64,000 nucleotides of DNA from Camelus ferus (lineage: Eukaryota). Positions 1,184 through 62,665 of this stretch are shown in pieces; positions within the stretch are counted from its first letter, which is position 1; the number at the start of each line of letters is the position of its first letter. The translations under genes were made by a program, and so were the position numbers. Below the pieces are notes generated by a model. That model did no database searches, was not told where the DNA came from, and saw nothing but the letters and a program-made list of their open reading frames with translations. The stretch is taken from NCBI RefSeq assembly GCF_009834535.1, contig NC_045704.1:9424001-9488000 (forward strand). The letters run 5' to 3'.

Positions 1184-5232
<4,049 letters not shown>

Positions 5233-8105: not shown

Positions 8106-8109
<4 letters not shown>

Positions 8110-8139
<30 letters not shown>
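8110..8139. repeat. (AC)n microsatellite
   Basis: ~15 perfect AC units. Confidence 0.95.
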
Positions 8140-8140
<1 letters not shown>

Positions 8141-8559: not shown

Positions 8560-9300
8560 TGGGCCAAAGGCTGCCTGGATCAGGTATTAGCGGGGAGAAC
8601 GCCAGGCTCCAGTAAAAGACCGGATGGGGGCACAGGTGTCCGGAAGAAGGCCCCGAAGGTGCGGGACCGCACAACTGCCAACCATGGGGTGGGGCAGGGC
8701 CAGGAAGGGGGCGGGGCTTAGCTGGGAGAGGACGAAAGGTCTAGAACAGGGGCGGAGCCTGAAGTGGCGGGGAAGGGCAGAGTTTAGAACTGGGGTAAGG
8801 GGCGTGGGTGTGGACGAGGTCAAGCTAAAGAGGAGCCAGACCTGGGGCAGGGCCTACACTGGGAAGGGGTGGAGCTTGCAATGAGGATGAGGAGGTGGGG
8901 CTCACTAGGGGCGGGGTCCGGGCCTGGGGCGGGGCTTAGGTGGGAGCGTGAGCATGAGGGGCGTGGCCTGTGTGAGGGGTCTGGCCGGGCCAGGTGGGAA
9001 GGATTTAAGAGCCGGGCAAAGAGGCCTCCCGCCCAGCTACGGCCCGAAGTCGGGTGGCTGCGCCAGGAACTTCCGGGTGGGACCGTGCGTATTTCCGGTC
9101 AATATGGCGGCGCCCAGCATGGTCAGGTGCAGGCGACTCTGTCTTTAGTAGCGGCGGCGACACAAGGCCCAGGGAGGTGAGGTGCGCCCCGCTCTGGCTC
9201 CTTTTTTCCGAAAGAAGGGAGGAGACTTATTGCTAAGAAGACCAAGGGGAAGGCTTGTTGCTGTGCAGGCCGTGGGTTGCTAAGAGACAGGAACGCCTGC
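8560..9300 (+). promoter_or_regulatory. HSPBP1 promoter and non-coding exon 1
   Basis: Multiple GC boxes (ggggcgggg), ETS sites (acttccgg 9069, tttccggt 9092), YY1-like aatatggcggc 9101-9111, donor AG|gtgagg at 9176/9177; exon 2 acceptor cagcag at 9497-9502. Confidence 0.75.
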
Positions 9301-9595: not shown

Positions 9596-12500
9596 ATGGC
9601 GGAACAAGGCTCTGGGGGCAGCCGCCTTCCCCTGGCGCTGCCCCCAGCCTCCCAGGGTTGCTCGTCTGGGGGCAGCGGCTCCTCCGCAGGGGGCTCGGGC
9701 AATCCCCCGCCACCACGAAACCTCCAAGGCTTGCTGCAGATGGCCATCACGGCGGGCTCTGAAGTGCCAGACCCCCCTCCAGAACCCATGAGTGAGGAGG
9801 TAAAGGGTGGGGACCTAATGAGCTGGGGTGAGAGGTGTGGGGACAGAGATATGTTGGGAAGTGAGCCCTGGGGAAGGGCGGGAGTCCAGGGGTGAAGGCT
9901 TAGTAGATTGTATTTTTTGTGCTTGATGGAGTTATTGTAGACTGAAGGTCGGATCTCTGGATCCCCGCACTGTGCTGGGAGGCAGAATATCTGCTGGGAG
10001 GCAGAATAGCCTCATGGTGAAAAGTAAAAGCGAGGGCTCTCCAGAGCCAGACAGACCTGGATTCAGCATTTACAGCTGTGTGACCTTGGGTATATCACTT
10101 CATCTTCCTGAGCCTCAAGTTTTTCATTTGCAAGTTGATGCTAATAATAAGATTCACAATGGTACTTCCCAGGGCAGTTCTAAGGTTCCAGTTGAAGCAG
10201 AACACCACACAGGCGCATAGCCAAGTGCTCCTGAAGGCAGCAGAGTGTTATTAAGAGCACAGGCTCTGTGGACAGACTACTTAGGTTTGACTTAAGGCCA
10301 TGCAGATGGCTGACTGTGTGACCTGGGGCAAGCCACACCTTTCTGTGCCTCTTATTTTCTCATCTGTGAAGTGAGGATAACAATACTTACTAAACAGTCT
10401 TATGGTTACTGGGAGAAAGAGGGTGAGAAGGGATAAATTTGAGAGTTTGAGATTTGTAAATGTTAACAACTATATATAAAAATAGATAAAAACCATTTTT
10501 TTTCTGTACACCACAGGGAACTATATTCAATATCTTGTAATAACCTATAATGAAAAAGAATATGAAAACGAATATATGTATATATGTATGCATGACTGGG
10601 ACATTATGCTGTACACCAGAAGTTGTAACTGACTATACTTCAATAAAAAAAAGAAAGAAAAGAAAACAATAATACCATGGAGGGTTGTTTTGGACATTAA
10701 CAGCAATATTTGTTACATATGATGCTTACTTGGCCATGGTGATTACAGTATACAAAACACTGTGCTAATTCAGTTACAACCACAATGTCGTTGAACCTTT
10801 AGGACAGTAAGGAAGGAAACAGGCACAGAAAGACAAACATCTTGCCCAAATTTATCCAGGACTGCGACTACAGAGCCTTCATATAAGCACTTAACATGGA
10901 GCCTGGCCGAAAAAAAAGCTAGTGGTCAATTCTCAGGGATGCTGTTCAACACCCAACGATGCACAGAATGGCCCCCACCACAGAACCGTCCAGCTCAAAG
11001 TGTCAGTAGAGACGAGGCTGAGAAATGCAGGTCCAGCCTGGACCTCTTCCCTGAACTTGAGGCAGCCTTAGGCATGTCATGGGTCCCTCAAACTTAGATG
11101 TTCAGGAATGAGCTCTCATCCCCATTCCTCCTGCTCCACACCTGCTTCTCTTGCCATCTTCCCCATCTTCTTCTAGTTGTGCAGGACAGAAACCAAGGAT
11201 TCCCTGACATCCTCTTTTTCTCTCACACCCCATAACCAGTCTCTCCATAGGTCTGTTGTCTAGAAAAGAGTCTGTCCATAGAAAGGGTGCTCGACAGATA
11301 ACCTGTTGGTGGCAGAACAGTCAGCTCTCTGTTGGCTGTTACTATTAGTGACCGTCACTCATGCGTTAATTACTGATACATTTTGCTTCTTTCCCCCACC
11401 CTCCTACCCCACCTTGTCCCCCAGAGGCGCCAGTGGCTGCAGGAGGCCATGTCGGCCGCCTTCCGGGGCCAGCGGGAGGAGGTGGAGCAGATGAAGAACT
11501 GCCTCCGAGTGCTATCCCAGCCCACGCCCTCCTCGGCTGGTGAGGCTGAACTGGCCGCTGACCAGCAGGAGCGTGAGGGGGCCCTTGAGCTGCTGGCTGA
11601 CCTGTGTGAGAACATGGACAATGCTGCAGGTACACCCAGGCCCTCTCCGGTGCGGGTCCGGCTGCCAGGGTCCTACCCCTTTGGCCTCCTGATCTCTTTT
11701 CTGTCTCTTGCCTCCTCCTCAGCTCCGGAGTCTTACTGCAGCCCAGCCCCTGTCTTTTGTCTCAGGGACCATAATCCAGCCTCTTTCCCAGCCTCCCAGC
11801 CTCCAGCCTCACCCTTCCAGTCTGCCTCCGACTCGGGCCCCTAGTGGGACTGCCCTGTCCCTCCCTCCTTGGTCCCCATGCTACCCCATGTAATGATGAT
11901 ACCAGGTTCAGTCTACCATCTCCCTGATGCTATATGAAACTGGCCGTTTCGCCCTGGTCTGCTGGGAATCCATTGCCACCCCCTAGAGTAAGAGACAGGA
12001 GGTGGTTCTGATGGGTTACTCAGATGAGGCTTTCCCGAGGGGTGACATCTGATCAGAGACCTGAAGTGAGGGTGTGAGTCATGCATGGGATGAGCTCTGG
12101 AGAAAGCAGTCCAGGCAGAGGGATCGGCCAGTGCAAAGGCCCTGAGGTAGGAATGTGCCTGGCACATGCGGGAACAGCCGGAAGGCCAGTGCAGCAGAGT
12201 GGAGTGAGTGAGGGACAGGGGTTAGGAGGTGACGCTGGGCATACAGGGCCTCGTGGGCCATGGTGGGTGCGGCGGATTTTATTCTAAATGCCCTGGAGCC
12301 AGTGGAAGGACGAGTCACCACCTCCACTTGGAGGGGCGTGGTGTAGTCATTGAGGGCGTTGATTGTCTGTTCTGGACGTTTCATGTACCTGGAATCATAG
12401 ACGTGTGACCTTTTGCAACTGGCTTCCATCACTGAGTGTGACGTTTTCAAGGTTCTTCCATGTCAGAGTCTGTATCGGAACTTTATTCCTTTTTGTGGCT

Positions 12501-15500
12501 GGCTGGTACTCCCGAGTGTGGATAGGCCACATGTTATTTACCCATTCATCAGATGATGGGCATTTGGGTCAATTCCCCTTTTGGTTGCTGTGAGTAATGC
12601 TGCTGTGAACACTGGCATACAAATATCTGTCCAAGTTTCTGCTGTCGATGCTTTTGGTTGTATGTGTAGGAGCTGTCACATGGTAACTCCACGTTTAACT
12701 TGTTGAGGAACTCTCAAGCTCACCGCCACTGCTTTATTTACGAAAGCAAGTGGTGGGCTGTTGCTCGGTGACCTCTGGTCTGGCGTGTGCTTCTCCCGCA
12801 GGGGATGTTCCAGTTGTCACAAAGACGGGGAGGTCAGAACTGGCATTTAGTGGGCTGGAGCCTGGGACCCTAACCCTCCAAATGCTGATGTTGCACACTG
12901 GCCTTGGAGGGACCCCCCCAAGTTGGGAGAGAGCAAGCCTTTGGAGGCAGGCTCCCCTCAGCCTCACCAGGTGTGTTAGTCCATTTGTGCTGCTGTAACG
13001 AAGACCGCAGACTGGGGGCTTAAAGCACAGAAGTCTATTCTCGCAGAGGCTGGAAGCCCGGGGGTTGGTTCCTTCTGAGGCTTGTAGCTGGGGGTCTTCT
13101 TGCCGTGTCCTCTTGTGGTCTCTCCTGTGCACGTCTGTGTCCTCGCCTCCTCTTTTGATAAGGGCACCAGTCATATTGGATTGAGGCCCTGTCCTGTGAC
13201 ATTATTTCGCCTTGATCACCTCTTTAAAGGTCCTGTCTCCAAGTGCCATCACATCCTGAGGCCCTGGGGGTTAGGGCTTCAACATAAGTTTGGGGGGGGA
13301 CACAGCTCAGCCCATCACACCTGGCCTATCTGCTCTCTTCTCTCCACACAGACTTCTGCCAGCTGTCGGGCATGCACTTGCTGGTGGGTCGCTACCTGGA
13401 GGCGGGGGCCGCAGGGTTGCGGTGGCGGGCAGCGCAGCTCATCGGCACGTGCAGCCAGAACGTGGCGGCCATCCAGGAGCAGGTGCTGGGCCTCGGCGCC
13501 CTGCGCAAGCTACTGCGCCTGCTGGACCGGGACACCTGCGACTCCGTGCGTGTCAAGGCCCTCTTCGCCATCTCCTGTGAGTGTCCCGGGGGCTGCTGGG
13601 CAGGAGCTCAGGTCCCCAGGGGCCAGCACCAGCCAGCGGATCTGCTTGAGGGTAGAGGGAGAGGGCTCTTGTTTGTTGATTTATTTCCAGTACCTGTCGG
13701 GACTCTGCTGGGCACTGGGAACAGAGCTGCGAGCCCAGCGCACCCTCTGCCGGTCAGAGAGCCAGACCCTAAGCACACAGGCCGAGGCCCCGCTCGAGTG
13801 CTGTAGGCCCGTCGGAGCTCTCGGCCTTGGCACTGTTGACATCGGGGGCCTGATCGTTCCTTGTCGTGGGGAGGGGGGCAGCTCTTGAGGGGGCTGCTTG
13901 AGCGTCCTGGCAAGCATGGCAGCGGGCTTCTCCCAGAGAACACAGTCCTGAATGCTGGTTAGGAGCAACGGAAACTACAATGTCCTTTATCTTTTTGTTT
14001 TTATTTTTGTACCACTTAGAACATACCCCTATCTTGTCCCTCCCCCTTTCCATCTCCCCACTGCACTGGTAACCACTACTTTGTTCTCTGTATTTGTGAG
14101 TCTATTTCCTTTTTTGTTGTATTCAGTAGTTTGTTGTATATTTTTAGATTCCACATGTAAGTGCTAACAGTATTTGTTTTTCTCTGAACTGTGTACTTTA
14201 AAAAGGTAAATTGTACAGGCTATGGAATTATATCTCAATTAAAAATACTTCAACGTAATGCTTGCAAAGCCTGGCCCATAGAAATCAATGATGATGATGG
14301 TGATGATGGTGGTGATGTGGTGATGGTGACGGTGGTGACAGTGGTGACTATGACTGTGACCTCAATGCCCCAACTTCCCCCTCACCCCTACCCCCAGGCT
14401 TGGTCCGGGAGCAGGAGGCTGGGCTGCTGCAGTTCCTCCGCCTGGACGGCTTCTCCGTGTTGATGCGGGCCATGCAGCAGCAGGTGCAAAAGCTCAAGGT
14501 CAAGTCGGCATTCCTGCTGCAGAACCTGCTGGTGGGCCACCCTGAACACAAAGGTGGGGCAGCCAGGGCACGGAGCCTGGGTGCTTCCTGAGGTGGGGGC
14601 GTGAGGTGGGGGAGTGCATGGGTGAAGGGACCGCCCATCTGACTCCTGTGGCCCTTCTCCAGGGACTCTGTGCTCCATGGGGATGGTCCAGCAGCTGGTG
14701 GCCCTCATCCGGACAGAACATAGCCCCTTCCATGAGCATGTGCTTGGAGCCCTGTGCAGGTGCGCTGGGGCCTGAGAGGACGGCACCCCCTCTCGGGGGT
14801 TAAGGGTATCAGGTCAGAGGGGAGCAGGAATCCCAGGGCTGGCCCTGTCTGAGCCCATTTCCTCACCTTAGGGGCTAAGACAGCAGCCTGGGGAGGAGGG
14901 AGAGTCTTTCTTACACACATGCTCCCCTGCGCACACAAGAAGTACAAGAAGAGTAGAGTCTTAAGAGAGTGACAGAATGGACAGCAGAGCGAGCAGGCAG
15001 CAGCTCTCATGTGTGGCGCTGGCGCCGGGCCAGGCACTATGTTAAGTGCCCTTTTTTGTGCAAGTCTCATCAAAGTCCCTGAGGTAGGGTGGGGAGGGGA
15101 CGTTAGTGAAGTCCAAGTTGCAGATGGGGAAACCAGTGCAGCATGGGGAGCCACTTGCCCAGGCTCCCATGGGAGCAGTGGGGGGTGGGCCCATGCAGAG
15201 GGAGGCCCCAAGGACCGCTCTTCTGTCCCGCAGCTTGGTGACAGACTTCCCCCAGGGCGTGCGGGAGTGCCGGGAGCCTGAGCTGGGCCTGGAGGAGCTT
15301 CTGCGGCACCGCTGCCAGCTGCTGCAGCAGCACGAGGAGTACCAGGTATGGCACTGCTGGCAGGGCCGGGGCGGGGCCAGGGGCCCTGCCTTCCTGGCCT
15401 CTGTGGTTCCAGTCAGCAAATGTCCACTGCCCCCTCCCTGTGCCATGTGCTGTGTTAGAACCCGGGGGGTGGTGGGGAGGATGAGAGGCTGGGAGTTTCT

Positions 15501-18500
15501 TAGAGTAACGAATTCACTGAATTATTATCCAAATTATTTACTACCACTATTTATGTCATATCATTCAAATATTTAATAATCAAATACTTTATTAGATTGA
15601 TAAATAACAAGTAAATGATAAATAGCAACCAATTAAACATTCAAATAAATAGATAAGTAACAAATATGTGATAAAGAACAGCTCATTAGCTATTTAATTA
15701 GATTAAGGGTAATAAGTGGTAGATAACAAGTAATAAATAACTCGCTAGATAGTTAAATAATAAGTAACAAGCGGCAATACAACTCAGAGATATTTAATTA
15801 TATAGATATTAAGTTACAAGTGATAAATAACAACTCTGATATTTAATTAAATAGATAAATAACAAATAAGTGATAAAGAGCAACTAATTCTACATTCAAA
15901 TAATCAGTTAATTATTTAAACAACTAAGTGATTTAGTTAACTGTACTTCAGTGATTTAGTCATTCGTAGAGGTACTAGCCAGGCGTTAATACTTCAGCAA
16001 AGCCCAGCACTGCAAACGTGCTGCGCTTCTGGGACCTCGGTTCTGCTGAGTCCATTCCTCTATGGACACCATCAAGAGGCGTGCCGGGCACTGGGTGTGT
16101 CGGAGTAGGGGTGACTGGGAGAGGCACAGTGCCCGCCCCCAGGTGCTCGCCCCCAACCTTGTCACAGGAACCCATGGAGATACGTGCCTGTGGGCCATGG
16201 GGCAGGGGGTGCCCTGGTCCTGTCTGGCCTCAGGGAGCATGTCTGTCATTGCTCAACACATCCGTGTGTTTGTTCCCTGAGCCTCTGGTGTGCCAGACCC
16301 TGGTACCAGACCATGAGGGTTGACCTGGTAAGGGAGGCTTCATGTGAACTATCCAACATGCCTTTTCTCTGTTTTCAAGAAAAAATTTTAACAGTTTTAT
16401 TAAGGTATAATTGACATATATGGGAAGTGTGCAGTGTGAGAAGTTTTGATGTATGTGTACACCTGTGGAAACTGTCATTTTTCCATCTCTCACATTCATC
16501 AGGGGTGGGTCACCCACGGGCCAGGCCCCGACCTGGGTACTAGGGATTTAGTGAGGAGCAAAGGGATATAGCTGTGGTTCCCACGGGGCAACAGAAAACA
16601 TACACTCGTATGTATATTTACAAATACAAACACATCTATTGTGTGTGTGTATATATATATGCATGCAAGTATAATGTCTAATATATGTGTGTGTATATAT
16701 ATATATATATATATAAAACTTAAGCTATACTGTGGTGTATAATATGACATCAAAGAGTTAGAACTATACTAAAGAAAAATTAAACTAGTGACAATGGTGG
16801 GCAGTGATATTTTAAGTAACATTGTGCATTAGTTTTCTAGGGCTGTTACAGATTACCACAAATTGGGTGGTTTGACACAGAAACTTAGTCCTTCACAGTT
16901 CTGGGGACTAGACGCCTGAAGCCAAGGTGTCAGCAGGGCTGTGCTCCCCCTGAAGGTGCTAGGGAAGAATCCTTCCTTGCCTCTTCCAGCTTCTTGTAGT
17001 TGCTGGCAATCCTTGGCATCCCTTGATGAGATCCATCACTCCAATCTCTGCCTCTGTTTTCATGTGGCTTTCTTTCTCCCCTGTGTGTCTGTGTCTGTGT
17101 CTTAGAATTCTTTCCAGATAGGTAAACAGAGGTCTGCTTTAATTTCAGTGTAATTCAATATTACAATTGCAGAGGAGAGGGTGTAGCTCAGTGGTAGAGT
17201 ACATGCTTAGCATGTACGAGGGCCTGGGTTCAATCCCCAGTGCCTCCATTAAAAGTAAATAAATAAACCTAATTAGCTACCCCCTAAAACAAAACAATGA
17301 AACAAAATTTTTTAAAAATGTATAACTGCATATTTCCTAAGGTGACTAGATCATTGTTTAGTTGGTCCTCTTTTGCAGGTATGTTTGTGGGCCCCATGTA
17401 GAGTTTAATTTCACTAATGCTTTTTGAATGGGTCCCATAGTCACGTGGTTCAAATTTCAAGATGCACAAGAGGGTAACAGTGAAAAGTCTCCCTCCTACC
17501 CCTGCCCCTAGCACCCAGTCAGTACCTCTCCCGGTTCCTCAGGTGGCCTTCCTAAGATATCCTGTGCACATACAAGGAAATGTGTATAGAAAGTCTTTTC
17601 CTCTTCCTCTCTTCATTTTGTGCAATTTCAGCCAATCCTGACCTCCCTTCTGCTCTTGCTGTATTCCCTTTCACACCGTCTCCAGGAGTGCATTTCCTGT
17701 CCGTGCCTATGGCTCTATCGTCTTTCCTCATGTAGCTGCACAGTAGGGAGAGCCTCTGTCATGTAACCGCCCCTCTCCATGGACGTGGAGGTAGTTTCCA
17801 CCCTCTCACTACTGCCAGCTCTGCTAAAAGAATAACCTTTGACACATATTACTTTATATGTGGGAGTATGTCTACAGAACAGTTTCTAGAAAGGAAAAGA
17901 CTGGGTTAAGGTAGATTAAAGATGAAGTTACAGGCTTAGGGGCCATGTCCTTAGCTGTTGGCCAAGTTGCTCTCCATAGAAGTTGGACCAGTCGACACGC
18001 CAGCCGTGAGGGTGCCTAGCTTTCCCACATCCTGGCCAGGACAGGGTGCCTCAAGCCGTTTGACCTTTTTTTCAAACTGATTAATGTGAAAAGCACTATT
18101 CCAGTCCAGCTTACATTGTACATTCTCCAGTTTACATTCTCCCATGAGTGAAGCTGGGTGTCTTTTTCCTTTCTTGTGAACTACTCATCATATCCTTTTC
18201 CCATTTGTCTACTGGGTGGTAGTTGTTGCAATTGATTTATTGAAGCTCTTGAAGTATTAAGTTTGTTAGCCCTTTGTGATGAGTTGCAAATATTTTTCAC
18301 TGCTAATTGTTTTTCTTTCATTTTCGTTTCTGGAATCTTATTGCCATGTAGACAACTTTAATGTTTATGTAGACCAACCTCTCCCGTGCTTCTTTCTTGG
18401 TTTCTGGCATTTGTACCCATGGAAGGGGTTTTAAGTAGAAATTAGTAAAGGTTGGTCATATCTGGGAATTAGAAATAGCCTGAGGGGGCTGATGTGAGGA

Positions 18501-50972: not shown

Positions 50973-51262
50973 GCAGACATAGTAAGCAATTTTATGGTTA
51001 CCAGGGGAAAGGGGGTGGGAAGGGATAAATTTGGGAGTTTGAGATTTGCAAATGTTAATCACTGTATATGAAAATAGATAAAAAACCAATTTCTTCTGTA
51101 TAGCACAGGGAGCTATATTCAATATCTTGTAATAACCTTTAATGAAAAAGAATATGAAAACAAATACACATATGTATTTGCATGACTGGGACATTATGCT
51201 GTACACCAGAAATGGACACATTGTAACTGACTGTACTTCAATTGAAAAACAACAACAACAAA
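50973..51262 (+). mobile_element. Young cetartiodactyl L1 3' end nested in an older L1, with TSD
   Basis: ttatggttaccaggggaaagggggtgg...gactgtacttcaattgaaaaacaacaac; flanked by agaaatctctgt (50961-50972) and agaaatctttgt (51263-51274). Confidence 0.85.
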
Positions 51263-51689: not shown

Positions 51690-51935
51690 AGAATTTTTTT
51701 TGTTATTTTTAACGATTTCTTTAAACTGAGGTGTAGTTAATTTACAATGTTGTGTTAGTTTGAGGTGTACAGCCAAGTGATTCAGTTTTATATACATAGA
51801 TATATTCTTTGTGAGATTCTTTTCCATTATAGGTTATTACAAGATATTGAATATAGTTCCCTGTGCTATACATTATAAACTTATTTATCTACTTTATATA
51901 TAGTAGTTAGTATCTATTAATCCCATATTCCAAAT
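51690..51935 (-). mobile_element. Cetartiodactyl L1 3' end (reverse)
   Basis: tagttaatttacaatgttgtgttagttt...ttccattataggttattacaagatattgaatatagttccctgtgctatac. Confidence 0.8.
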
Positions 51936-53305
51936 TCATCCCTAGTAGATAGTATTTTTGAATTTTTATTTTTATTAAGCACTACATAATACATGAAAAA
52001 CCTTCTAGCAGGGGTAAGTGAGAACCACCGAGTTGTTTTTTCATCAGTCAGGAAAATGCCTCCTCAGGCAATCGGTGTTCTCCAAATCCTTCAGTACATA
52101 GCACCCATTAACCCCAGGGATACGCCTCCCTCTTTCCATCAAAGTCCGCTGAGATGATAAAGGGCAGTCCTTTTTCTAAATAGGGGACCTTCAGATACCT
52201 GTGAGTCCAGAGCTGTCCAGGAGCAGGTAGCTGCTGTGTATTGCGGTAGATAGTGTTTTTAATTCCATTTCAAAAGCAAGAGGACAGAGACACAGTGAGG
52301 TTGGATAAGGTTCAAGATGGCATTGGTGATTAGTGACAAGCATGCTGTTTGCAGTACCCACACTCTTCACTTTCAGACTGTATGTGAAATGCAGGCGGCC
52401 TGAGAAGCCCCTCCGACGCTGGAGGTCTAGGGATGAACCAAAAATAAACATGGCCTACGGTTTCTCAAAGGCTTTAAAAGAACCAGGCATTGCTCTAAGA
52501 CTTTATATATGAACTCACTTACTCCTCACAGCATATTTACAAGGGGTTGTGCCCATTTTGGTAGATTAGGAATCTAAGTCACTGCAAATTTAAGCCACTT
52601 GGCTCAAGGGCCTGGGTAGAATGTGGCACGTGCCTCCGCACATACGGACAGTCTGGCATGTGTTGTAGAGACAGCACAGGTCCTGACGGAGCTAAAAAGA
52701 CAGGTCTGACCCAGCATGTTGACCCTTGAATCCTAAGGGCTAGCAGGAAGGGGCACCTGGCAGAGCAGACGGCATATGCAAAGGCCAGGAGGCAGAATAT
52801 ACTGGGCTCATTTGGTGACAGCTGCACGGATTTGGGGGAGGCAGGGAGAGGCTGAGGGGCCAGTGCCTGCCTCAGGGCGCAGGAGAGTAGACCCCCCACC
52901 TGGCTTTGGTGTGTAACTGTCCACTTGAGAGGGATGGACACATCTTTCTTCCGGCACCCCCTCCCACTCTGAACATCTGGGACATGTGTTGTGCATGCAT
53001 ACATCAGCGGGAAGAAGTGCCCTCATCTCTTACCCGCGCAGGATAAAGTGAAGCGAGGCAGGGGCTGCAGGGGAGACCCTGTGGCCAGGAGAAGCCAGAG
53101 CTTCCAGAGGTGAGGACCAAGGCTGAGGGCGGGGGTGGGGCTAGGAGTTCTCCGGCTGGAAAGCCTCTACTTCCTCCTCCTCCCTTCTTGCCCTGGCCTA
53201 TGGCCTTACTGCTGGGCTGGGAAAGGGGAAATTCTTGCGTTTAAAGTCCAGCAGGTGGAAGGTCCTGGGCTAGGACACTTGGGTCCCCTGGCAGTGTCCA
53301 GAGAC

Positions 53306-56300
53306 ATGACCGGGGCTGGCAGAGGCCTCAGGGCCTTGGGGAGCCTGGTGCTGCTGGTGAGTGCTCCCAGACTCAGGGTAGTGGGGGTGGGGGGGTCCTC
53401 TGAGAGGAGCAGAGGGGGGCCAACTCCTGGGTCCCAGGAAAGAGGAGGCTGGGGTCCCAGAACTCAGGTCCAGAGTGGGGAGGGACTGATAATTCCCTGG
53501 AGAGGAAGCAAGTTTCTAGGTTGGGGGAGATTGCTGGGGAGTCGGACACCCGGGCTCTTAGACATTGCTACTTCTGCGGTGAGAGTGAACTCAGGTTACT
53601 GGCAAGACACAGGTAAGCTTACGAAGACTCAGGAGCCTCGGCCCCCAGCCCGCTCCTCCCTCAGACCCAGGGGTCCAAGTCCCCAGCCTTTTCCTTCAGA
53701 CTGGATGTCTGGCTCCTGGTCCCCAACATCAGTCTCTTCTTTCATTCCCAGTTTGTTGGTTACTTCCTTGCCTTAGTCTTCTAAGGCTGTATTTTTTCAG
53801 GAAGTGAAACCATTAAGTTTATCTCTCTACCATATCAGTGAAGCCAATCCCAGCTCCTGGGTCCCTGGAGTCCTGCCCCTTCCCCACTCCCCCTGCCCCC
53901 AACACAGGGCACACCCAGAGAAGACAGACATACTATGGGATGACCTTTGTCAGAGCCCAGCCTGCAGGAGGAGAGTCTGTGTGCTGTCCCTCCTCTCCTT
54001 CAGGCAGTGTGACTCGCAGGGTCTGAGCAGAGGACGGGAGGGTCTCTGGCTGGCAGACTCACTGGGGTCAGGGGAGGTGAGCTTCGGTGTCTGATTCCCC
54101 CCCTCTTGGATCTCTCCAGGGCCTGTGCAGCTGGACAGGGGCCAGGGCGGACGGTGAGTGACCCCTGTCTGAGTTCACTGCCCACACAAAGCCATTGCAC
54201 CCTCAAGTCCCGTGAGCTTCCAGAGGGAGGTCTCCATGGTGGGCACAGCGATCCCCACCTGGCTCCGATGGAGCTAGTCCTTTCTGGACACGAGGCAGGA
54301 ACTGGGAGCAGTGGAAGGGACACTCCTGATCTGCTCCCTGCTCACAGTGAATTCTTCTTCCCCATTCTCAGCCTCCAACCCAGTCGTAAACCTGACTGTG
54401 GAGGCCTGGACCAGCAGCTCCATCACCCTACGCTGGGAGGCCCCCAGTGGCCTGGACCAGCAGAACTACACCTACTGGGTCCAGTGGACCGGACGAGATA
54501 ACAAAACCGAGAGCCGAAACACGACAGACACCGTTTTCACAGCGGAGGGACTTGACCCTGGCTCTTCCTATGAATTTTCCGTGTGGGTGGAGAAGGATGG
54601 ACTCACTAGCTCCAAGAAGACCCTCAAAACCACCACAGGTGAGAGGCAACCACTGTTTTTCTTTTTTTCCTAAAGGAAGGTGGCAGGCAGTGACTGAGAA
54701 CACGCATGAGAACTCGGCAGGCCCGTAGACCGACAGAAACATATGGGAGCCACGCTTGTGGATCCAAGGTTTCTATGAGCCACATTGCATAAGTCAGAAC
54801 AGGTGAAACCAATTATACAGAGGTATTTTACTTATCTGAGTAGATCCAAGACAGTATTGCTTCGACATGTAATTGATGAAAGAAAGACAGATGAGCACAT
54901 TCTAAGTGCTCAAGGGCTCTGTTGCGGGGCTCCCAGTCTCCCACTGGGTTTGTATCTACCCTAATGATCATTGGGAGGGCATTTCCACTGTTGCAGAAAT
55001 TCCACTGGAAAGCACTGGTCTAGATCCTTGCTCCCCAAGTGTGGTCCGTGGGTGGGCTGCGTCAGCATCTCCTGAGAACTGGCTGTAAATGCAGAATCTC
55101 AGTCCCATCCTAGACCTCCTGAGTCAGAACCTGCCTTTTAGCAAGATCCCCAGTGACACGTATGCACATGGAAGTCTGGGAAGCACTGTCTAGACCCCAC
55201 ACCCCGTATCTCCTGGACCCGTAGTTCAGGCAGGACTGGGAACTGACTTTGAGGGTCAGCAATGCCCACTGACTGTCCCCTCGTTTACTCCCCTGCTGAC
55301 ACTGAATCTTTCTTCTTCATTTCTCAGCCCCCAACCCCATCAGGAACCTGAGTGTGGAGACTCAGACCACCAGCAGCATCACCCTGAGGTGGGAGGTGCC
55401 TGAGGGCCCTGACCTTCAGAGCTACACCTACTGGGTCCAGTGGTCTGGAGAGGGAGACGCAATTGAGACCGGACGCACAGCCAACACCAGTTTCACAGTG
55501 GAAGGACTTGAACCCGGGACCTTGTACAACTTCTCTGTGTGGGCAGAAAAGAATGGAGTCAACAGCTCCCAGGTGACTCTCAATGCCACCACAGGTGAGA
55601 GGCAACTCTTATTGTGATTCTTTTTTTTTTTTTTAATGCGGGGTTGATGATAGACGATGGTGCAGAGCTGACAGGAGAATGTGGCACACTCCCTAGCCCA
55701 GTGTCTCTTTGGATCACGATGAGAGAGATGAAGAAAGAATATCCATAGGGTTGTGCGTTGGGATCAGTCAGGCTCTAGGACTCTAGAGAACACAGACCAT
55801 AACACTAGGGCGTATCCTCCTGAGCAACCAGGGCTGTGCAGGGGAGTCTTGTTACTGAGTTCTGGGGGGATTAGGTGCTGTGGAATGTGGACACTCTGAC
55901 CCTCTGACTCTTGTTCTCCTACTTCCCAACTATGTCACGGGCTTGAGGATGGAAGCTCAGACCATGAGCTCCATTACCCTGAGGTGGACAGCTCCTCTGC
56001 TCTAGACCTCCACTGTCCAATATGGTAGCCCCTAGGCATTGGTGGCTATGTACATTTAAGTTCATTAAAATTGCATAAAATTGCATAAAATTGCAGGCTT
56101 CGTTCCATATTTTAAATGCTCAAGAGCTCCGTTGAGGGGCTCCCAGTCTCCCACTGGGTTTGTATCTACCCTAATGATCATTGGGAGGGCATTTCCACTG
56201 TTGCAGAAATTCCACTGGAAAGCACTGGTCTAGATCCTTGCTCCCCAAGTGTGGTCCGTGGGTGGGCTGCGTCAGCATCTCCTGAGAACTGGCTGTAAAT

Positions 56301-59300
56301 GCAGAATCTCAGTCCCATCCTAGACCTCCTGAGTCAGAACCTGCCTTTTAGCAAGATCCCCAGTGACACGTATGCACATGGAAGTCTGGGAAGCACTGTC
56401 TAGACCCCACACCCCGTATCTCCTGGACCCGTAGTTCAGGCAGGACTGGGAACTGACTTTGAGGGTCAGAAATGCCCACTGACTGTCCCCCCGTTTACTG
56501 CCCTGCTGACACTGGATCTTTCTTCTTCATTTCTCAGCCCCCAACCCCATCAGGAACCTGAGTGTGGAGACTCAGACCACCAGCAACATCACCCTGAGGT
56601 GGGAGGTGCCTGAGGGCACTGACCTTCAGAGCTACACCTACTGGGTCCAGTGGTCTGGAGAGGGAGACGCAATTGAGACCAGATGCACAGCCAACACCAG
56701 TTTCACAGTGGAAGGACTTGAACCCGGGACCTTGTACAACTTCTCTGTGTGGGCAGAAAAGAATGGAGTCAACAGCTCCCAGGTGACTCTCAATGCCACC
56801 ACAGGTGAGAGGCAACTCTTATTGTGATTCTTTTTTTTTTTTTTTAATGCGGGGTTGATGATAGACGATGGTGCAGAGCTGACAGGAGAATGTGGCACAC
56901 TCCCTAGCCCAGTGTCTCTTTGGATCACGATGAGAGAGATGAAGAAAGAATATCCATAGGGTTGTGCGTTGGGATCAGTCAGGCTCTAGGACTCTAGAGA
57001 ACACAGACCATAACACTAGGGCGTATCCTCCTGAGCAACCAGGGCTGTGCAGGGGAGTCTTGTTACTGAGTTCTGGGGGGATTAGGTGCTGTGGAATGTG
57101 GACACTCTGACCCTCTGACTCTTGTTCTCCTACTTCCCAACTATGTCACGGGCTTGAGGATGGAAGCTCAGACCATGAGCTCAATTACCCTGAGGTGGAC
57201 AGCTCCTCTGCTCTAGACCTCCACTGTCCAATATGGTAGCCCCTAGGCATTGGTGGCTATGTACATTTAAGTTCATTAAAATTGCATAAAATTGCATAAA
57301 ATTGCAGGCTTCGTTCCATATTTTAAATGCTCAAGAGCTCCGTTGAGGGGCTCCCAGTCTCCCACTGGGTTTGTATCTACCCTAATGATCATTGGGAGGG
57401 CATTTCCACTGTTGCAGAAATTCCACTGGAAAGCACTGGTCTAGATCCTTGCTCCCCAAGTGTGGTCCGTGGGTGGGCTGCGTCAGCATCTCCTGAGAAC
57501 TGGCTGTAAATGCAGAATCTCAGTCCCATCCTAGACCTCCTGAGTCAGAACCTGCCTTTTAGCAAGATCCCCAGTGACACGTATGCACATGGAAGTCTGG
57601 GAAGCACTGTCTAGACCCCACACCCCGTATCTCCTGGACCCGTAGTTCAGGCAGGACTGGGAACTGACTTTGAGGGTCAGAAATGCCCACTGACTGTCCC
57701 CCCGTTTACTGCCCTGCTGACACTGGATCTTTCTTCTTCATTTCTCAGCCCCCAACCCCATCAGGAACCTGAGTGTGGAGACTCAGACCACCAGCAACAT
57801 CACCCTGAGGTGGGAGGTGCCTGAGGGCACTGACCTTCAGAGCTACACCTACTGGGTCCAGTGGTCTGGAGAGGGAGACGCAATTGAGACCAGATGCACA
57901 GCCAACACCAGTTTCACAGTGGAAGGACTTGAACCCGGGACCTTGTACAACTTCTCTGTGTGGGCAGAAAAGAATGGAGTCAACAGCTCCCAGGTGACTC
58001 TCAATGCCACCACAGGTGAGAGGCAACTCTTATTGTGATTCTTTTTTTTTTTTTTTAATGCGGGGTTGATGATAGACGATGGTGCAGAGCTGACAGGAGA
58101 ATGTGGCACACTCCCTAGCCCAGTGTCTCTTTGGATCACGATGAGAGAGATGAAGAAAGAATATCCATAGGGTTGTGCGTTGGGATCAGTCAGGCTCTAG
58201 GACTCTAGAGAACACAGACCATAACACTAGGGCGTATCCTCCTGAGCAACCAGGGCTGTGCAGGGGAGTCTTGTTACTGAGTTCTGGGGGGATTAGGTGC
58301 TGTGGAATGTGGACACTCTGACCCTCTGACTCTTGTTCTCCTACTTCCCAACTATGTCACGGGCTTGAGGATGGAAGCTCAGACCATGAGCTCCATTACC
58401 CTGAGGTGGACAGCTCCTCTGCTCTAGACCTCCACTGTCCAATATGGTAGCCCCTAGGCATTGGTGGCTATGTACATTTAAGTTCATTAAAATTGCATAA
58501 AATTGCATAAAATTGCAGGCTTCGTTCCATATTTTAAATGCTCAAGAGCTCCGTTGAGGGGCTCCCAGTCTCCCACTGGGTTTGTATCTACCCTAATGAT
58601 CATTGGGAGGGCATTTCCACTGTTGCAGAAATTCCACTGGAAAGCACTGGTCTAGATCCTTGCTCCCCAAGTGTGGTCCGTGGGTGGGCTGCGTCAGCAT
58701 CTCCTGAGAACTGGCTGTAAATGCAGAATCTCAGTCCCATCCTAGACCTCCTGAGTCAGAACCTGCCTTTTAGCAAGATCCCCAGTGACACGTATGCACA
58801 TGGAAGTCTGGGAAGCACTGTCTAGACCCCACACCCCGTATCTCCTGGACCCGTAGTTCAGGCAGGACTGGGAACTGACTTTGAGGGTCAGAAATGCCCA
58901 CTGACTGTCCCCCCGTTTACTGCCCTGCTGACACTGGATCTTTCTTCTTCATTTCTCAGCCCCCAACCCCATCAGGAACCTGAGTGTGGAGACTCAGACC
59001 ACCAGCAACATCACCCTGAGGTGGGAGGTGCCTGAGGGCACTGACCTTCAGAGCTACGCCTACTGGGTCCAGTGGTCTGGAGAGGGAGACGCGATTGAGA
59101 CCACACGCACAGCCAACACCAGGTTCACAGTGGAAGGACTTGAACCCGGGACCTTGTACAACTTCTCTGTGTGGGCAGAAAAGAATGGAGTCAACAGCTC
59201 CCAGGTGACTCTCAATGCCGCCACAGGTGAGAGGCAACTCTTATTGTGATTCTTTTTTTTTTTTTTTAATGCGGGGTTGATGATAGACGATGGTGCAGAG

Positions 59301-62300
59301 CTGACAGGAGAATGTGGCACACTCCCTAGCCCAGTGTCTCTTTGGATCACGATGAGAGAGATGAAGAAAGAATATCCATAGGGTTGTGCGTTGGGATCAG
59401 TCAGGCTCTAGGACTCTAGAGAACACAGACCATAACACTAGGGCGTATCCTCCTGAGCAACCAGGGCTGTGCAGGGGAGTCTTGTTACTGAGTTCTGGGG
59501 GGATTAGGTGCTGTGGAATGTGGACACTCTGACCCTCTGACTCTTGTTCTCCTACTTCCCAACTATGTCACGGGCTTGAGGATGGAAGCTCAGACCATGA
59601 GCTCAATTACCCTGAGGTGGACAGCTCCTCTGCTCTAGACCTCCACTGTCCAATATGGTAGCCCCTAGGCATTGGTGGCTATGTACATTTAAGTTCATTA
59701 AAATTGCATAAAATTGCATAAAATTGCAGGCTTCGTTCCATATTTTAAATGCTCAAGAGCTCCGTTGAGGGGCTCCCAGTCTCCCACTGGGTTTGTATCT
59801 ACCCTAATGATCATTGGGAGGGCATTTCCACTGTTGCAGAAATTCCACTGGAAAGCACTGGTCTAGATCCTTGCTCCTCAAGTGTGGTCCGTGGGTGGGC
59901 TGCGTCAGCATCTCCTGAGAACTGGCTGTAAATGCAGAATCTCAGTCCCATCCTAGACCTCCTGAGTCAGAACCTGCCTTTTAGCAAGATCCCCAGTGAC
60001 ACGTATGCACATGGAAGTCTGGGAAGCACTGTCTAGACCCCACACCCCGTATCTCCTGGACCCGTAGTTCAGGCAGGACTGGGAACTGACTTTGAGGGTC
60101 AGAAATGCCCACTGACTGTCCCCCCGTTTACTGCCCTGCTGACACTGGATCTTTCTTCTTCATTTCTCAGCCCCCAACCCCATCAGGAACCTGAGTGTGG
60201 AGACTCAGACCACCAGCAACATCACCCTGAGGTGGGAGGTGCCTGAGGGCACTGACCTTCAGAGCTACGCCTACTGGGTCCAGTGGTCTGGAGAGGGAGA
60301 CGCAATTGAGACCAGATGCACAGCCAACACCAGTTTCACAGTGGAAGGACTTGAACCCGGGACCTTGTACAACTTCTCTGTGTGGGCAGAAAAGAATGGA
60401 GTCAACAGCTCCCGGGTGACTCTGAGTGTCGCCACAGGTGAGAGGTAGCATTGTGCACTCTCTTGGGTGAGATTATGAACTGGCCAAGATGGCACCTTCT
60501 CTGGGCTAATGGGAGTTGTAGTTTGAGGCGACCTGCGGTGCGTCCGTTCGGGGGCAACAGAAACTGAGGGAATAAGAGGTGTTTTGTTTTGGGGAAGAAG
60601 AGGATGAGCTAGTTCTCAGATTACTGGCACGACTGGTGGGGAGTGGGGACTTAGAAAACCGCCTTGGATGGAGCCTACTGATTCCTCCTATCCGTTCCAC
60701 CCAGATCCAAGCCCCCCCTCCATCGTGTCCTGCATCAGCGCTTCGGGGGGCTACGGGGTCATCCTGACCTGGTCCTGCCCCCCGGGAGGCTATGAGGCCT
60801 TTAAAGTGGAGGTGGGCAGGCAGCAGTTTTCCCAGAGCGGATCCTCCTGTGGGAAGGGCGTGTCCTTGTCGGGACTCAGGCCGGCTCAGGCCTACGCAGC
60901 CACCGTCACAACCATCTGGGATGGAAGGGAGGCACGGTCTGCCTCCATGACCTGCCGCACTGAGAGCACAGGTGAGCAGAGCCCCACAGGTACAGAGAGC
61001 TACAATGACATTCTCTCAGACCCCGTCAGGCCCTGTTGTGAAGGAGTCTCACCACCCCATGGGGTCCTTTTTGTTTATGTTTTGTTTCCTGCTTTCTGTA
61101 AAACAGCTCCTTTGAGATGTCATTCATATAACCTGTAACAGTCCACCCATTTAAAGTGTGCAACTCAGTGGCTTCTAATATACTCATCATCATTATACCA
61201 TCATCGTTGTTAATTTTAGGATATTTTTTTTACCGTATTTGTATTACCCCTTAAGCCATCACCCCCTAGTTTCGCTAATTCCCCACCAGCCAGCCATTGT
61301 CTGTCTGTAATCTATTTCTGTCTCTATAGATACGCCTCTTCTGGACATTTCCAAAAAAAAAAACCAAAAAAAAACCACACAGTATGTGGTCCTCTGTGAC
61401 TAGCTTCTCTCACTTAGTATAATGCGTCTAAGGTTCATCCATGTTCTAGCGTGTGTCAGCACCTCATTACTTTTTATTGCCGGATAATATTTCATTGTAC
61501 AGATAGAATGCGTTTTGTTTATCCATTCATCCATGGATGGACCCTACTTTTTGGCTGTTCTGAATGGTGCTCTGGACATTTGTGTGCACATTTCTGTGTG
61601 GGTGTGTGTCTTCGTTTCTCCTGGGTGTATACCCGGAAGTGAAATTGTTAGATCATGTGGTAACTCTGTGTTTAACCTTTTGAAGAACTGCCAAATTTTT
61701 TTCCAGCACTGGTCGCATGATTTTTCACTCACCAATGGGACATTTGAAAAAGTCTGAACCTCAGGAAATCTTTGCTCATGTACCGTTGACCATGGTCATA
61801 GGCCTCCCTGGGCCCCCGTCAGTCAGCGCCTAGGAATCAGAGCCTCTTAGGAGATGGGGTCTTTGATCTGGAGACACTGGAGTTTGGTGCACTGAACATG
61901 GGGTGCTCTTCCAGGCTGGGCTTGGTGGTCCCACTGTCCAGGGTACTCTTGCTGAGACAGGTCCTCGTGGATCTTGGGCTGGATCGCTCTTTCTGGTGGG
62001 GACTGTCCTGGGTATTACTGTAGGGTGTCGAGCAGCATCCCCAGCCTCCACCCGCTCGATGCCGGTGGCACTGCTGCTGAAGTTGTAAGAACCTGAAAGT
62101 GTCTCCAGACATTGCCCGATGTCTCCTGGTGGGCAAAACCACCCTCAGTGAGGATCGCTAGTCTAGACCAAGGAAGGGGAGAGTCACTCTAAAAAGCAGA
62201 TTAGTTGGGAAAGTGATGTCTTTGGACCAGGCTCCTGGGAGGAAAGGTTGAGTGGGAAATAGGGCTTTATGCAGAAGCTTTCTCCTTTCCCTTCTCTGCC

Positions 62301-62665
62301 CTCGCATCTACCCTGCAGACCCTCTGATCACAGTCTGGGTTAGGACAGAGGTAGCAGAGATAGGACACCAGGAGAGGTGACCCAGACTCTAACAGCCCCT
62401 CATGCCTCCTTCCTCCAGTGGTCATCATAGGAGCCATCGTCGGTGTCCTCCTGTTTCTCATCCTGGTGGGCTTGTTGGTTTTCTTCCTGAAGAAGGGGTG
62501 AGACTCAGCTCAGGACTTACTGGGTGCCTGGAGGGTGGGGGTTGCGGGAAAGGTGAGGACCCCTGGTTCCGGCCTCTCTCCCCTCCCCAGCCTTTCACCC
62601 TAATGTCCTTTTCCCAGGTGTAAGAAGAGTGAGAAGAAACAGGCACACAGGGATCTGATCTGCAG
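53306..62665 (+). CDS. PTPRH: Receptor-type tyrosine phosphatase H (SAP-1), partial: signal peptide, 7 FN3-type exons, TM and juxtamembrane; phosphatase domain lies beyond window end
   Basis: Exons 53306-53356 ([17 protein letters not shown]), 54120-54153 ([11 protein letters not shown]), 54372-54638, 55328-55594, 56538-56804, 57749-58015, 58960-59226, 60171-60437, 60705-60971 (all 267 nt, phase 1-1), 62419-62497 ([27 protein letters not shown]), 62618-62665 ([15 protein letters not shown]). Confidence 0.95.
54372..54638 (+). CDS. PTPRH: PTPRH FN3 exon 1 (unique, outside the array)
   Basis: [41 protein letters not shown]...[18 protein letters not shown]...; ctcag|CC acceptor, ACAG|gtgag donor. 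Confidence 0.93.
54720..54940 (+). mobile_element. MER33-like hAT-Charlie fragment in PTPRH intron 3
   Basis: agaaacatatgggagccac...gagccacatt...aacaggtgaaacc...cgacatgtaatt...cacattctaagtgctcaa resembles MER33 consensus segments. Confidence 0.6.
55025..55188 (+). mobile_element. MER5A-like hAT element (five copies, one per array unit)
   Basis: aagtgtggtcc...cagcatctcctgagaact...aaatgcagaatctc...agacctcctgagtcagaa...ttttagcaag...aagcactg; TCTAGA on both sides. Confidence 0.75.
55328..55594 (+). CDS. PTPRH: PTPRH amplified FN3 exon, copy 1
   Basis: 267 nt, [89 protein letters not shown]; intact splice sites. Confidence 0.92.
55923..56005 (+). pseudogene. Truncated FN3 pseudo-exon (also at 57134-57216, 58345-58427, 59556-59638)
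   Basis: TT CCC AAC TAT GTC ACG GGC TTG AGG ATG GAA GCT CAG ACC ATG AGC TCC ATT ACC CTG AGG TGG ACA GCT CCT = [24 protein letters not shown], colinear with the start of the FN3 exons. The preceding pyrimidine tract ends ...cctac (no AG); in-frame TAG follows, then a MER3-like element. Confidence 0.8.
56008..56150 (-). mobile_element. MER3-like hAT-Charlie DNA transposon fragment (repeated in each full array intron, +1211 bp)
   Basis: ctgtccaatatggtagcccctagg...ggctat...ttaaaattgcataaaatt...ttttaaatgctcaa resembles the reverse-complement MER3 consensus; preceded by a TCTAGA hAT-type target site. Confidence 0.7.
56538..56804 (+). CDS. PTPRH: PTPRH amplified FN3 exon, copy 2
   Basis: 267 nt, ...[22 protein letters not shown]...[10 protein letters not shown]...; intact splice sites. 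Confidence 0.9.
57749..58015 (+). CDS. PTPRH: PTPRH amplified FN3 exon, copy 3
   Basis: 267 nt, reads identical to copy 2; intact splice sites. Confidence 0.88.
58960..59226 (+). CDS. PTPRH: PTPRH amplified FN3 exon, copy 4
   Basis: 267 nt, ...QSYAY...[10 protein letters not shown]...VTLNAAT; intact splice sites. Confidence 0.9.
60171..60437 (+). CDS. PTPRH: PTPRH amplified FN3 exon, copy 5 (divergent 3' end)
   Basis: 267 nt, ...QSYAY...[10 protein letters not shown]...[11 protein letters not shown]; intact splice sites. Confidence 0.9.
60705..60971 (+). CDS. PTPRH: PTPRH membrane-proximal Cys-containing FN3-like exon
   Basis: [38 protein letters not shown]...[28 protein letters not shown]...SMTCRTEST; matches the last ectodomain module typical of R3-family PTPs. 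Confidence 0.92.

What the first reader, a model, noticed from the sequence alone, without database searches (positions are those of the whole stretch)
54896..60445. Recent five-fold tandem amplification of one FN3 exon in the PTPRH (SAP-1) ectodomain
Seen: five in-frame 267-nt phase 1-1 exons repeat at a 1210/1211-bp period together with their introns, which are near-identical. Only one unique N-terminal FN3 exon and one membrane-proximal exon flank them, giving 7 modules. Established: human PTPRH has 8 mutually divergent FN3 domains and is an apical microvillar phosphatase of gut epithelium. Inference: in this lineage most ancestral FN3 exons were replaced by a single recently expanded module, so ectodomain length could be a coding VNTR that varies between alleles, individuals or camelid species.
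Basis: partly seen in the sequence, partly recalled or inferred. Interest (0 to 1): 0.85.

Follow-up and report, generated by a model that had tools for sequence, protein, structure and literature searches.

The report
Turning-over FN3 exon array in PTPRH
A camel gene for a gut-surface phosphatase (PTPRH) carries five nearly identical copies of one domain-coding exon in a row; the array is old and keeps being reshuffled, as in most mammals, so it is a real but not camel-specific feature.

Summary
At 54896-60445 a 1210/1211-bp unit is repeated 4.6 times at 98.3-99.9% identity, with no assembly gap. Each unit holds a 267-nt phase 1-1 exon plus intron. That gives five intact FN3 exons between one unique FN3 exon and one membrane-proximal FN3 exon of PTPRH.

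- The array is not a recent camel event. The same flank and unit junctions occur in dromedary (4 exon copies, two assemblies) and alpaca (3 copies).
- The inter-copy intron architecture is also found five times in hippopotamus.
- Units are more alike within a species than between species, and species-specific changes are shared by all units. This is concerted evolution by unequal crossing-over and gene conversion. Only the last step (units 2 and 3, 1 nt apart) is recent.
- The premise that human FN3 domains are mutually divergent is wrong: human modules pair at 95% and 84% identity.
- Of 149 mammalian PTPRH proteins, 90 have a module pair at 90% identity or more. Module number ranges from 1 to 13.

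Copy number differs between camelid assemblies (5/4/3). I found no paper describing this pattern.

The parts
53306..53377 (+). PTPRH exon 1: start codon and signal-peptide start (24 codons), followed by a GT donor
   Evidence: Identical over 24/24 residues to dromedary PTPRH P0226 residues 1-24
54120..54153 (+). Small exon 2 (34 nt). It sets phase 1 for the FN3 exons.
   Evidence: Exact match to P0226 residues 25-35; ctccag| acceptor and |gtgagt donor
54372..54638 (+). Unique N-terminal FN3 exon, 267 nt, phase 1-1. About 72% nt identity to the repeated exon.
   Evidence: Pfam fn3 E = 1.8e-9
54896..60445 (+). Tandem array of 4.58 units of 1210/1211 bp. Each unit has 432 nt of upstream intron, the 267-nt exon and 512 nt of downstream intron. 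The last unit stops 8 nt after its exon.
55328..55594 (+). Repeated FN3 exon, copy 1 (5 N-glycosylation sequons)
56538..56804 (+). Repeated FN3 exon, copy 2 (6 sequons; identical to copy 3)
57749..58015 (+). Repeated FN3 exon, copy 3
58960..59226 (+). Repeated FN3 exon, copy 4 (4 sequons). Its exon haplotype is closest to the dromedary copies, at 2-4 nt differences.
60171..60437 (+). Repeated FN3 exon, copy 5. Its last ~25 nt are diverged, and part of this divergence is shared with the last dromedary copy.
56066..56095 (+). 10-bp motif TAAAATTGCA x3 near the 3' end of unit 1. The same triplet is at 57277-57306, 58488-58517 and 59699-59728. Every dromedary unit has it x2 and every alpaca unit x1.
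60705..60971 (+). Membrane-proximal FN3 exon, 267 nt, phase 1-1, 4 Cys, no sequons
   Evidence: 98.9% identical to P0226 residues 480-568
62418..62498 (+). Transmembrane-segment exon (part mapped by exact peptide match). The next exon piece is at 62619-62663.
   Evidence: Exact 8-mer chain to P0226 residues 569-595 and 596-610

Best explanation
This is the FN3 stalk region of PTPRH (SAP-1) in a Camelus genome that is about 1% diverged from dromedary. The stalk is encoded by a tandem array of 1.2-kb units. Each unit carries one symmetrical (phase 1-1) 267-nt exon that encodes exactly one FN3 domain. Because every unit is in frame and the units are near-identical, misaligned recombination between units adds or removes whole domains without breaking the reading frame. 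Gene conversion keeps the copies alike. The array is ancient, at least as old as the camelid-hippopotamus ancestor, and it has been homogenised repeatedly. Different camelids now carry 5, 4 or 3 copies that look 'recent'. The same process operates in PTPRH across mammals. Shown here: the anatomy, the shared junctions, within-species likeness exceeding between-species likeness, and the differences in copy number between assemblies. Inferred: the recombination mechanism, inclusion of all copies in the mRNA, and any functional effect. The likely effect is a change in the length and N-glycan load of the ectodomain on the gut brush border, since each module carries 4-6 sequons.
For: Anatomy. Gene identity: named PTPRH orthologues; exact peptide matches to dromedary PTPRH. 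Same array in other camelids: dromedary L001 has 3.6 units and 4 exons, alpaca L002 has 2.6 units and 3 exons, and a second dromedary assembly L003 also has 4 exons. All junctions are identical in the three species. Concerted evolution: substitution differences per 100 sites over the first 705 unit positions are 0-3.0 between units within the window and 4.1-5.2 between window and alpaca units, while the flanks are 96.1-96.4% identical to alpaca. There are 25 substitutions plus indels fixed in all nine Camelus units against all three alpaca units, and 5 substitutions fixed in all window units against all dromedary units. The 10-bp motif count is 3/2/1 in every unit of the respective species. 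Antiquity: the junction probe spans five hippopotamus introns at about 77% identity. Generality: 90 of 149 PTPRH proteins have a module pair at 90% identity or more, and module number ranges from 1 to 13. Species-specific clades include hippo 6/7, mouse 5/5, porcupine 12/13, pika 6/6 and Tasmanian devil 10/12, and there is a camelid-only clade of 12 modules with support 0.999. Genomic periods differ by lineage: 1.2 kb in camelids, 1.45-1.75 kb in hippo, 2.17 kb in warthog and 2.72 kb in Peromyscus. FN3 fold. Weak expression evidence: RNA runs hold all sampled words of the copy-2 exon. Several RNA runs hold only 0.10-0.18 of a genomic stretch of which exons make up about 0.22. The dromedary and alpaca gene models include every copy.
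Against: Units 2 and 3 differ by a single base, so an assembly error of one unit either way cannot be excluded. Splicing of all five copies was not observed directly. The two dromedary assemblies agree at 4 copies, so no polymorphism within a species has been shown. Many of the orthologue proteins used in the survey are automatic gene models from assemblies of mixed quality, so individual module counts may be wrong.
Confidence: 0.85

Rival explanations
1. The assembly miscounts the array: it is real, but the count of five is wrong by one unit or more. For example, unit 2 or unit 3 may be an artefactual extra copy, or further copies may be collapsed.
For: Units 2 and 3 differ by 1 nt in 1211. 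No read evidence could be obtained. Older assemblies plainly mishandle this locus: alpaca has a 664-aa model, and dromedary GCA_000803125.3 carries many indels and yields a 670-aa model.
Against: Units 1, 4 and 5 each carry private variants, and units 2 and 3 are told apart by a real base difference. There is no gap in or near the array. The array is only 5.5 kb, which a single long read could span. Two independent dromedary assemblies resolve the homologous array to the same count.
Confidence: 0.2
2. A truly recent, camel-specific five-fold amplification of a single exon from a single-copy ancestor.
For: Very high identity between units. Unit 1 is slightly more diverged, as expected for a founder copy.
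Against: Alpaca and dromedary have identical junctions. The same inter-copy intron architecture occurs in hippopotamus. Alpaca unit 1 differs from unit 2 by 16 of about 400 nt in the upstream intron, about as much as either differs from the Camelus units. So the duplication is at least as old as the camelid split.
Confidence: 0.03
3. The array turns over neutrally. The FN3 stalk is under weak constraint, so the number of modules drifts and has no functional meaning, and some copies may be skipped in the mRNA.
For: pN/pS between copies is about 1 or higher (camelids 1-2.7; hippopotamus 1.08). Module number ranges from 1 to 13 in mammals with no obvious pattern. A human isoform lacking two modules exists (959-aa against 1121-aa isoforms). 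Knock-out mice are reported to have no morphological gut defect (PMC9900141).
Against: All 12 camelid copies keep open frames and canonical splice sites. In the window the exons carry 13 variable sites in 267 nt against 6 in 913 nt of intron (Fisher p = 2e-5). Eleven of the 13 change the protein and four make or break N-glycosylation sequons. That is more than neutral drift predicts, although the sites are not independent. The excess is not seen in alpaca or Peromyscus.
Confidence: 0.4

Closest known systems
Human PTPRH (SAP-1) internal two-FN3 duplication and the isoform lacking two modules
   Same: Same gene. Same ~89-residue module per exon. Module pairs are 95% and 84% identical within the human protein, and isoforms differ by whole modules.
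   Different: In human the duplicated block spans two modules, and only one extra block is seen. In camels a one-exon unit is repeated 3-5 times at over 98% identity.
LPA kringle IV type 2 coding repeat (recalled from general knowledge, not tested here)
   Same: In-frame tandem repeat of exon-plus-intron units, each encoding one protein domain. Near-identical copies. Number changes by unequal recombination.
   Different: The LPA unit holds two exons in about 5.5 kb, and its copy number is known to vary widely between people. Variation within a species is not shown here for camel PTPRH.
DMBT1 SRCR-domain exon array and transmembrane mucin repeats of gut epithelium (recalled from general knowledge, not tested here)
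   Same: Heavily glycosylated surface or secreted proteins of the gut lining. Their repeated domain exons vary in number and evolve by concerted evolution.
   Different: Different domain type. PTPRH couples the repeat stalk to an intracellular tyrosine phosphatase, and no microbial ligand is known for it.
Other R3 receptor phosphatases (PTPRJ, PTPRB, PTPRO, PTPRQ)
   Same: Ectodomain made only of FN3 repeats, with one exon per repeat. Chicote et al. 2017 (PMC5336234) note 'high variability in FN3 repeats'. The model matches the solved fourth FN3 of PTPRJ with TM 0.87.
   Different: That paper does not describe near-identical within-species repeats or lineage-specific homogenisation. I did not test whether PTPRJ, PTPRB or PTPRO behave in the same way.

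Membership tests
PTPRH (R3 receptor tyrosine phosphatase) orthologue | Ectodomain composed only of FN3 domains, one per phase 1-1 exon | tested here: met
   Seven 267-nt phase 1-1 exons. Pfam fn3 hits. AF2 model with FN3 fold.
PTPRH (R3 receptor tyrosine phosphatase) orthologue | Closest named relatives are PTPRH rather than PTPRJ, PTPRB or PTPRO | tested here: met
   Exon 1, exon 2, the membrane-proximal exon and the transmembrane exon match dromedary PTPRH exactly or at 98.9%. The membrane-proximal module finds only proteins named PTPRH as its best hits.
PTPRH (R3 receptor tyrosine phosphatase) orthologue | Single transmembrane segment followed by one PTP catalytic domain | tested here: inconclusive
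   The transmembrane exon is present at 62418-62498. The catalytic exons lie beyond the window end. The orthologous dromedary and alpaca genes carry PF00102.
PTPRH (R3 receptor tyrosine phosphatase) orthologue | Conserved neighbourhood (TMEM86B - PTPRH - SYT5 - DNAAF3) | tested here: inconclusive
   A C2-domain gene lies just downstream in L001 and L002, which fits SYT5. The gene order is taken from PMC9339297. Upstream genes in the window were not annotated.
Concerted evolution of a tandem array | Paralogous units are more alike within a species than orthologous units are between species | tested here: met
   Distance matrix. Camelid-only and alpaca-only module clades.
Concerted evolution of a tandem array | Common origin of the arrays (same junctions), so likeness is not due to independent duplications | tested here: met
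   Junction sequences are identical in three camelids. The junction probe spans hippopotamus introns.
Concerted evolution of a tandem array | Species-specific mutations have spread to all units | tested here: met
   25 substitutions fixed in Camelus units against alpaca units, and 5 in window units against dromedary units. The 10-bp motif count is 3/2/1 in every unit of each species.
Coding VNTR (copy number polymorphic within a species) | In-frame tandem units, so any copy number keeps the reading frame | tested here: met
   Phase 1-1, 267 nt, all open.
Coding VNTR (copy number polymorphic within a species) | Different copy numbers among individuals or alleles of one species | not testable with these tools
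The only within-species comparison, two dromedary assemblies, shows 4 and 4.
Coding VNTR (copy number polymorphic within a species) | All copies are included in the mature mRNA | not tested
   Indirect evidence only: RNA runs hold the exon words, and gene models of relatives include all copies.

The most novel reading that the evidence does not exclude
The FN3 stalk of PTPRH is a pan-mammalian, fast-turning-over coding exon array of 1 to 13 modules. Its length and N-glycan pattern are shaped by diversifying selection at the gut surface, making it an FN3-based counterpart of mucin or DMBT1 repeats that is wired to a phosphatase. On this reading, camel populations carry length alleles, and module diversity is actively maintained against homogenisation. 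In the window, exons vary about 7-fold more than the introns around them, and four of the eleven amino-acid changes make or break glycosylation sites.
Probability: 0.25. Interest if true: 0.7.

Novelty: new member of a known kind. Interest (0 to 1): 0.45.

Why it matters
Tandem domain-exon arrays that grow, shrink and homogenise are a known kind of gene architecture. I found no paper saying that PTPRH is one, and reviews still describe it as having a fixed 'eight FN3 domains'. The data here show that the stalk length of this gut brush-border phosphatase differs several-fold among mammals, and by whole modules among three camelid assemblies.

This has three consequences:
- It affects orthologue annotation, because collapsed or frameshifted models are common at this locus.
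- It affects how results from mouse or human are carried over to other species.
- It bears on ideas in which ectodomain size or glycan load controls access of R3 phosphatases to their substrates or ligands.

It also gives a compact 5.5-kb locus in which unequal crossing-over and gene conversion can be followed across a dated phylogeny.

Tried and rejected
1. Read depth and junction test. I laid two DNA runs, one RNA run and one sister-species run on the left flank plus one unit (window 53100-56105). No second call was available, so copy number in the animal and exon-to-exon joints in RNA remain untested.

2. A single-module search of the representative library mostly returned giant multi-FN3 proteins. 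PTPRH orthologues had to be picked out using the membrane-proximal module.

3. Six literature searches pairing PTPRH with tandem duplication, tandem repeat, positive selection, VNTR or concerted evolution, gene conversion, and structural variant found nothing on FN3 array turnover. The hits concerned cancer, an upstream 188-bp human insertion or gene order.

4. I tested whether 'exons vary more than introns' is general. It holds in the window. It does not hold in alpaca or Peromyscus californicus (1/270 against 22/2425). Warthog has too little variation to judge. I therefore do not present it as a property of the gene.

5. Pairwise pN/pS values are mostly above 1, but they rest on 0-3 synonymous changes per pair. 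I do not claim significant positive selection from them.

6. The junction's presence in hippopotamus shows that whatever created it is ancient.

7. The spliced window protein was never submitted to any search, because it has no reference and may not be typed in.
Full report
**Observation**

- The repeat finder gives five copies starting at 54896, 56106, 57317, 58528 and 59739, spaced 1210, 1211, 1211 and 1211 bp apart.
- A lag-identity scan shows near-perfect periodicity from 54896 to about 60445, which is 4.58 units.
- The only N runs in the window are at 465-609 and 5506-5741, far from the array.
- Units 2 and 3 differ by one base in 1211. Units 2-5 differ from each other by 1-9 bases. Unit 1 differs from the rest by 16-21 bases, six of them in its first 30 nt.
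- Each unit carries a 267-nt exon: 55328-55594, 56538-56804, 57749-58015, 58960-59226 and 60171-60437. All have the same polypyrimidine-AG acceptor and GTGAGAGG donor, an open frame and phase 1-1.

**Gene model**

I mapped the dromedary protein P0226 onto the window by exact peptide matches.
- Exon 1 is 53306-53377.
- A 34-nt exon 2 is 54120-54153.
- The unique FN3 exon is 54372-54638.
- The five copies follow.
- The membrane-proximal FN3 exon is 60705-60971, also 267 nt and phase 1-1.
- The transmembrane exon starts at 62418, and the gene then runs off the window.

The module matches Pfam fn3 at E = 8.5e-13. It folds with pLDDT 93.8 into seven strands. It superposes on FN3 structures, including the fourth FN3 of PTPRJ, with TM 0.87-0.89.

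**Identity of the gene and of the genome**

The flanks of the array are 98.7-99.3% identical to the Camelus dromedarius assembly GCA_036321535.1 (locus L001). They are 96.1-96.4% identical to the Vicugna pacos assembly GCA_048564905.1 (locus L002). The window therefore comes from a Camelus genome that is not dromedary. That it is a two-humped camel is my inference.

**The array is shared, and its copy number differs**

- Dromedary L001 has 3.6 units and four exon copies, with a period of about 1203 bp.
- Alpaca L002 has 2.6 units and three exon copies, with a period of 1187 bp.
- A second dromedary assembly, GCA_000803125.3 (L003), also has four copies, although it is riddled with small indels.

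Three junctions are the same in all three species:
- left flank into unit 1 (gacagatgag|CACATTC);
- unit into unit (ggttc|CAyATTTTAA);
- last exon plus 8 nt into the right flank (GTGAGAGG|TAGCATT).

A single ancestral array therefore predates the split between Old World and New World camelids.

A 520-nt probe centred on the unit-unit junction aligns without a break to five introns of hippopotamus PTPRH at about 77% identity. Inter-copy introns of this architecture therefore already existed in the common ancestor of camelids and hippopotamus.

**Concerted evolution**

If the copies had simply diverged since that ancient duplication, copies within a species would differ by more than the species do. 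The opposite is seen.
- Over the first 705 unit positions, units within the window differ by 0-3.0 substitutions per 100 sites, and units 2-5 by 0-1.3. Window and alpaca units differ by 4.1-5.2 per 100.
- Twenty-five substitutions and 15 indel columns are fixed in all nine Camelus units against all three alpaca units.
- Five substitutions are fixed in all window units against all dromedary units.
- Only three sites keep a unit-1-specific state across all three species.
- The 10-bp motif TAAAATTGCA near the unit end is present three times in every window unit, twice in every dromedary unit and once in every alpaca unit.

New mutations have therefore spread through the array after each speciation. 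This is the signature of unequal crossing-over and gene conversion. The edges are less homogenised, as expected. Unit 1 keeps its own first 30 nt in all species. The 3' end of the last exon carries changes that are shared between the window and dromedary.

In alpaca, units 1 and 2 differ at 16 of about 400 upstream-intron sites but at none of 267 exon sites. This shows old intron divergence alongside a converted exon.

The single difference between window units 2 and 3 points to a very recent last event. This event accounts for the extra copy relative to dromedary, if the assembly is right.

**The phenomenon is general**

I cut 149 mammalian PTPRH proteins into FN3 modules with a purpose-built HMM.
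- 90 proteins have at least one pair of modules at 90% identity or more, and 106 have a pair at 80% or more.
- Module number ranges from 1 to 13.
- The highest counts, 12-13, are in porcupine, hedgehog, Tasmanian devil and wallaby. Bovids have two.

Examples:

| Species | Near-identical modules |
|---|---|
| Pika | four at 100% |
| Peromyscus californicus | seven at 97-100% |
| Bobcat | five at 100% |
| Warthog | three at 99-100% |
| Dog | three at 96-99% |
| Mouse | five at 88-95% |
| Orangutan | three at 100% |

In a human isoform, modules 2 and 4 are 95% identical and modules 1 and 3 are 84% identical.

In a tree of 154 modules, the amplified modules form species-specific clades with good local support. 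All 12 amplified camelid modules form one camelid-only clade with support 0.999.

At the DNA level the arrays have lineage-specific periods: 1.2 kb in camelids, 1.45-1.75 kb in hippopotamus, 2.17 kb in warthog and 2.72 kb in Peromyscus.

**Exon against intron variation**

Within the window, the five units carry 13 variable sites in the 267-nt exon and 6 in 913 nt of intron (odds ratio 7.7, Fisher p = 2e-5).
- Eleven of the 13 change the protein.
- Codon 48 has four states among the camelid copies (G, R, T, M), with all three codon positions varying.
- Residues 16, 54, 85 and 87 create or destroy N-glycosylation sequons, so the modules carry 5, 6, 6, 4 and 5 sequons.
- On the model, these residues lie mostly in loops, on the C' edge strand, or at the linker end of strand G.

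Several caveats apply.
- The sites are not independent.
- Five of the 13 sit at the unhomogenised 3' edge of the last exon.
- Pairwise pN/pS values of 1-2.7 rest on very few synonymous changes.
- The exon excess is absent in alpaca and in Peromyscus.
- In hippopotamus pN/pS is 1.08.

I read this as weak or absent purifying selection on the module surface. Diversifying selection is possible but not shown.

**What could not be done**

The decisive test of copy number was my single read-laying run, on the left flank plus one unit. I therefore have no read depth, no spanning reads and no exon-exon joints.

The indirect evidence is as follows.
- Many DNA runs of the same organism hold 0.90 of the sampled words of the flank plus unit 1.
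- More than a dozen RNA runs hold all sampled words of the copy-2 exon.
- Several RNA runs hold only 0.10-0.18 of a genomic stretch of which exons make up about 0.22, as spliced RNA would.
- One run of a second organism also holds the exon.
- The dromedary and alpaca gene models include every copy.

**Literature**

Six full-text searches found no description of near-identical or lineage-specific FN3 arrays in PTPRH.
- A review states 'just eight FNIII domains' for SAP-1, and it reports no morphological gut defect in knock-out mice (PMC9900141).

**Verdict**

It is best described as one instance of an old, continually homogenised domain-exon array in PTPRH. It is not a recent camel-specific replacement of ancestral exons.

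Copy number differs between camelid species assemblies. Whether it varies within species is open.

The broader pattern across mammals appears unreported and is of moderate interest. The kind of mechanism is well known.

Noticed in passing
window 51834-52428: A 595-bp segment 0.9-1.5 kb upstream of the PTPRH start codon is present in the window and in alpaca. It is absent from both dromedary assemblies, so it is a dromedary-specific deletion in the likely promoter region. Its first 110 nt resemble two other places in the window (10429-10543 and 51021-51135, about 79% identity), which suggests a repeat element end.
   Followed up: partly
window 56066-56095, 57277-57306, 58488-58517, 59699-59728: The 10-bp motif TAAAATTGCA is tripled in every window unit, doubled in every dromedary unit and single in every alpaca unit. 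This small expansion has spread through each array, and it explains most of the difference in unit length.
   Followed up: yes
window codon 49 of repeated exon copies 2, 3 and 5 (e.g. 56684-56686): Three of the five modules carry a lone cysteine (R49C, CGC to TGC at a CpG) on the C' strand of an otherwise cysteine-free FN3 module. All three alpaca copies have the same cysteine and no dromedary copy does. This may be a parallel CpG change or an old variant that has been retained. Unpaired extracellular cysteines could allow disulfide-linked dimers.
   Followed up: partly
L003 (Camelus dromedarius GCA_000803125.3) 4604-8927: This older dromedary assembly has the right number of units but dozens of small indels in them (87-98% identity to the window unit, with 10-44 gap openings per unit). 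This explains the truncated 670-aa gene model P0299.
   Followed up: yes
L004 (hippopotamus) 12936-16367: A second, separate tandem duplication lies downstream of the main FN3 array in hippopotamus PTPRH. Its period is 1714 bp at 99.1% identity, and it holds two further FN3-like exons that are only 52-54% identical to the camel module.
   Followed up: no
window 465-609 and 5506-5741: There are two N runs of 145 and 236 bases, far upstream of the finding. I left them as they are.
   Followed up: no
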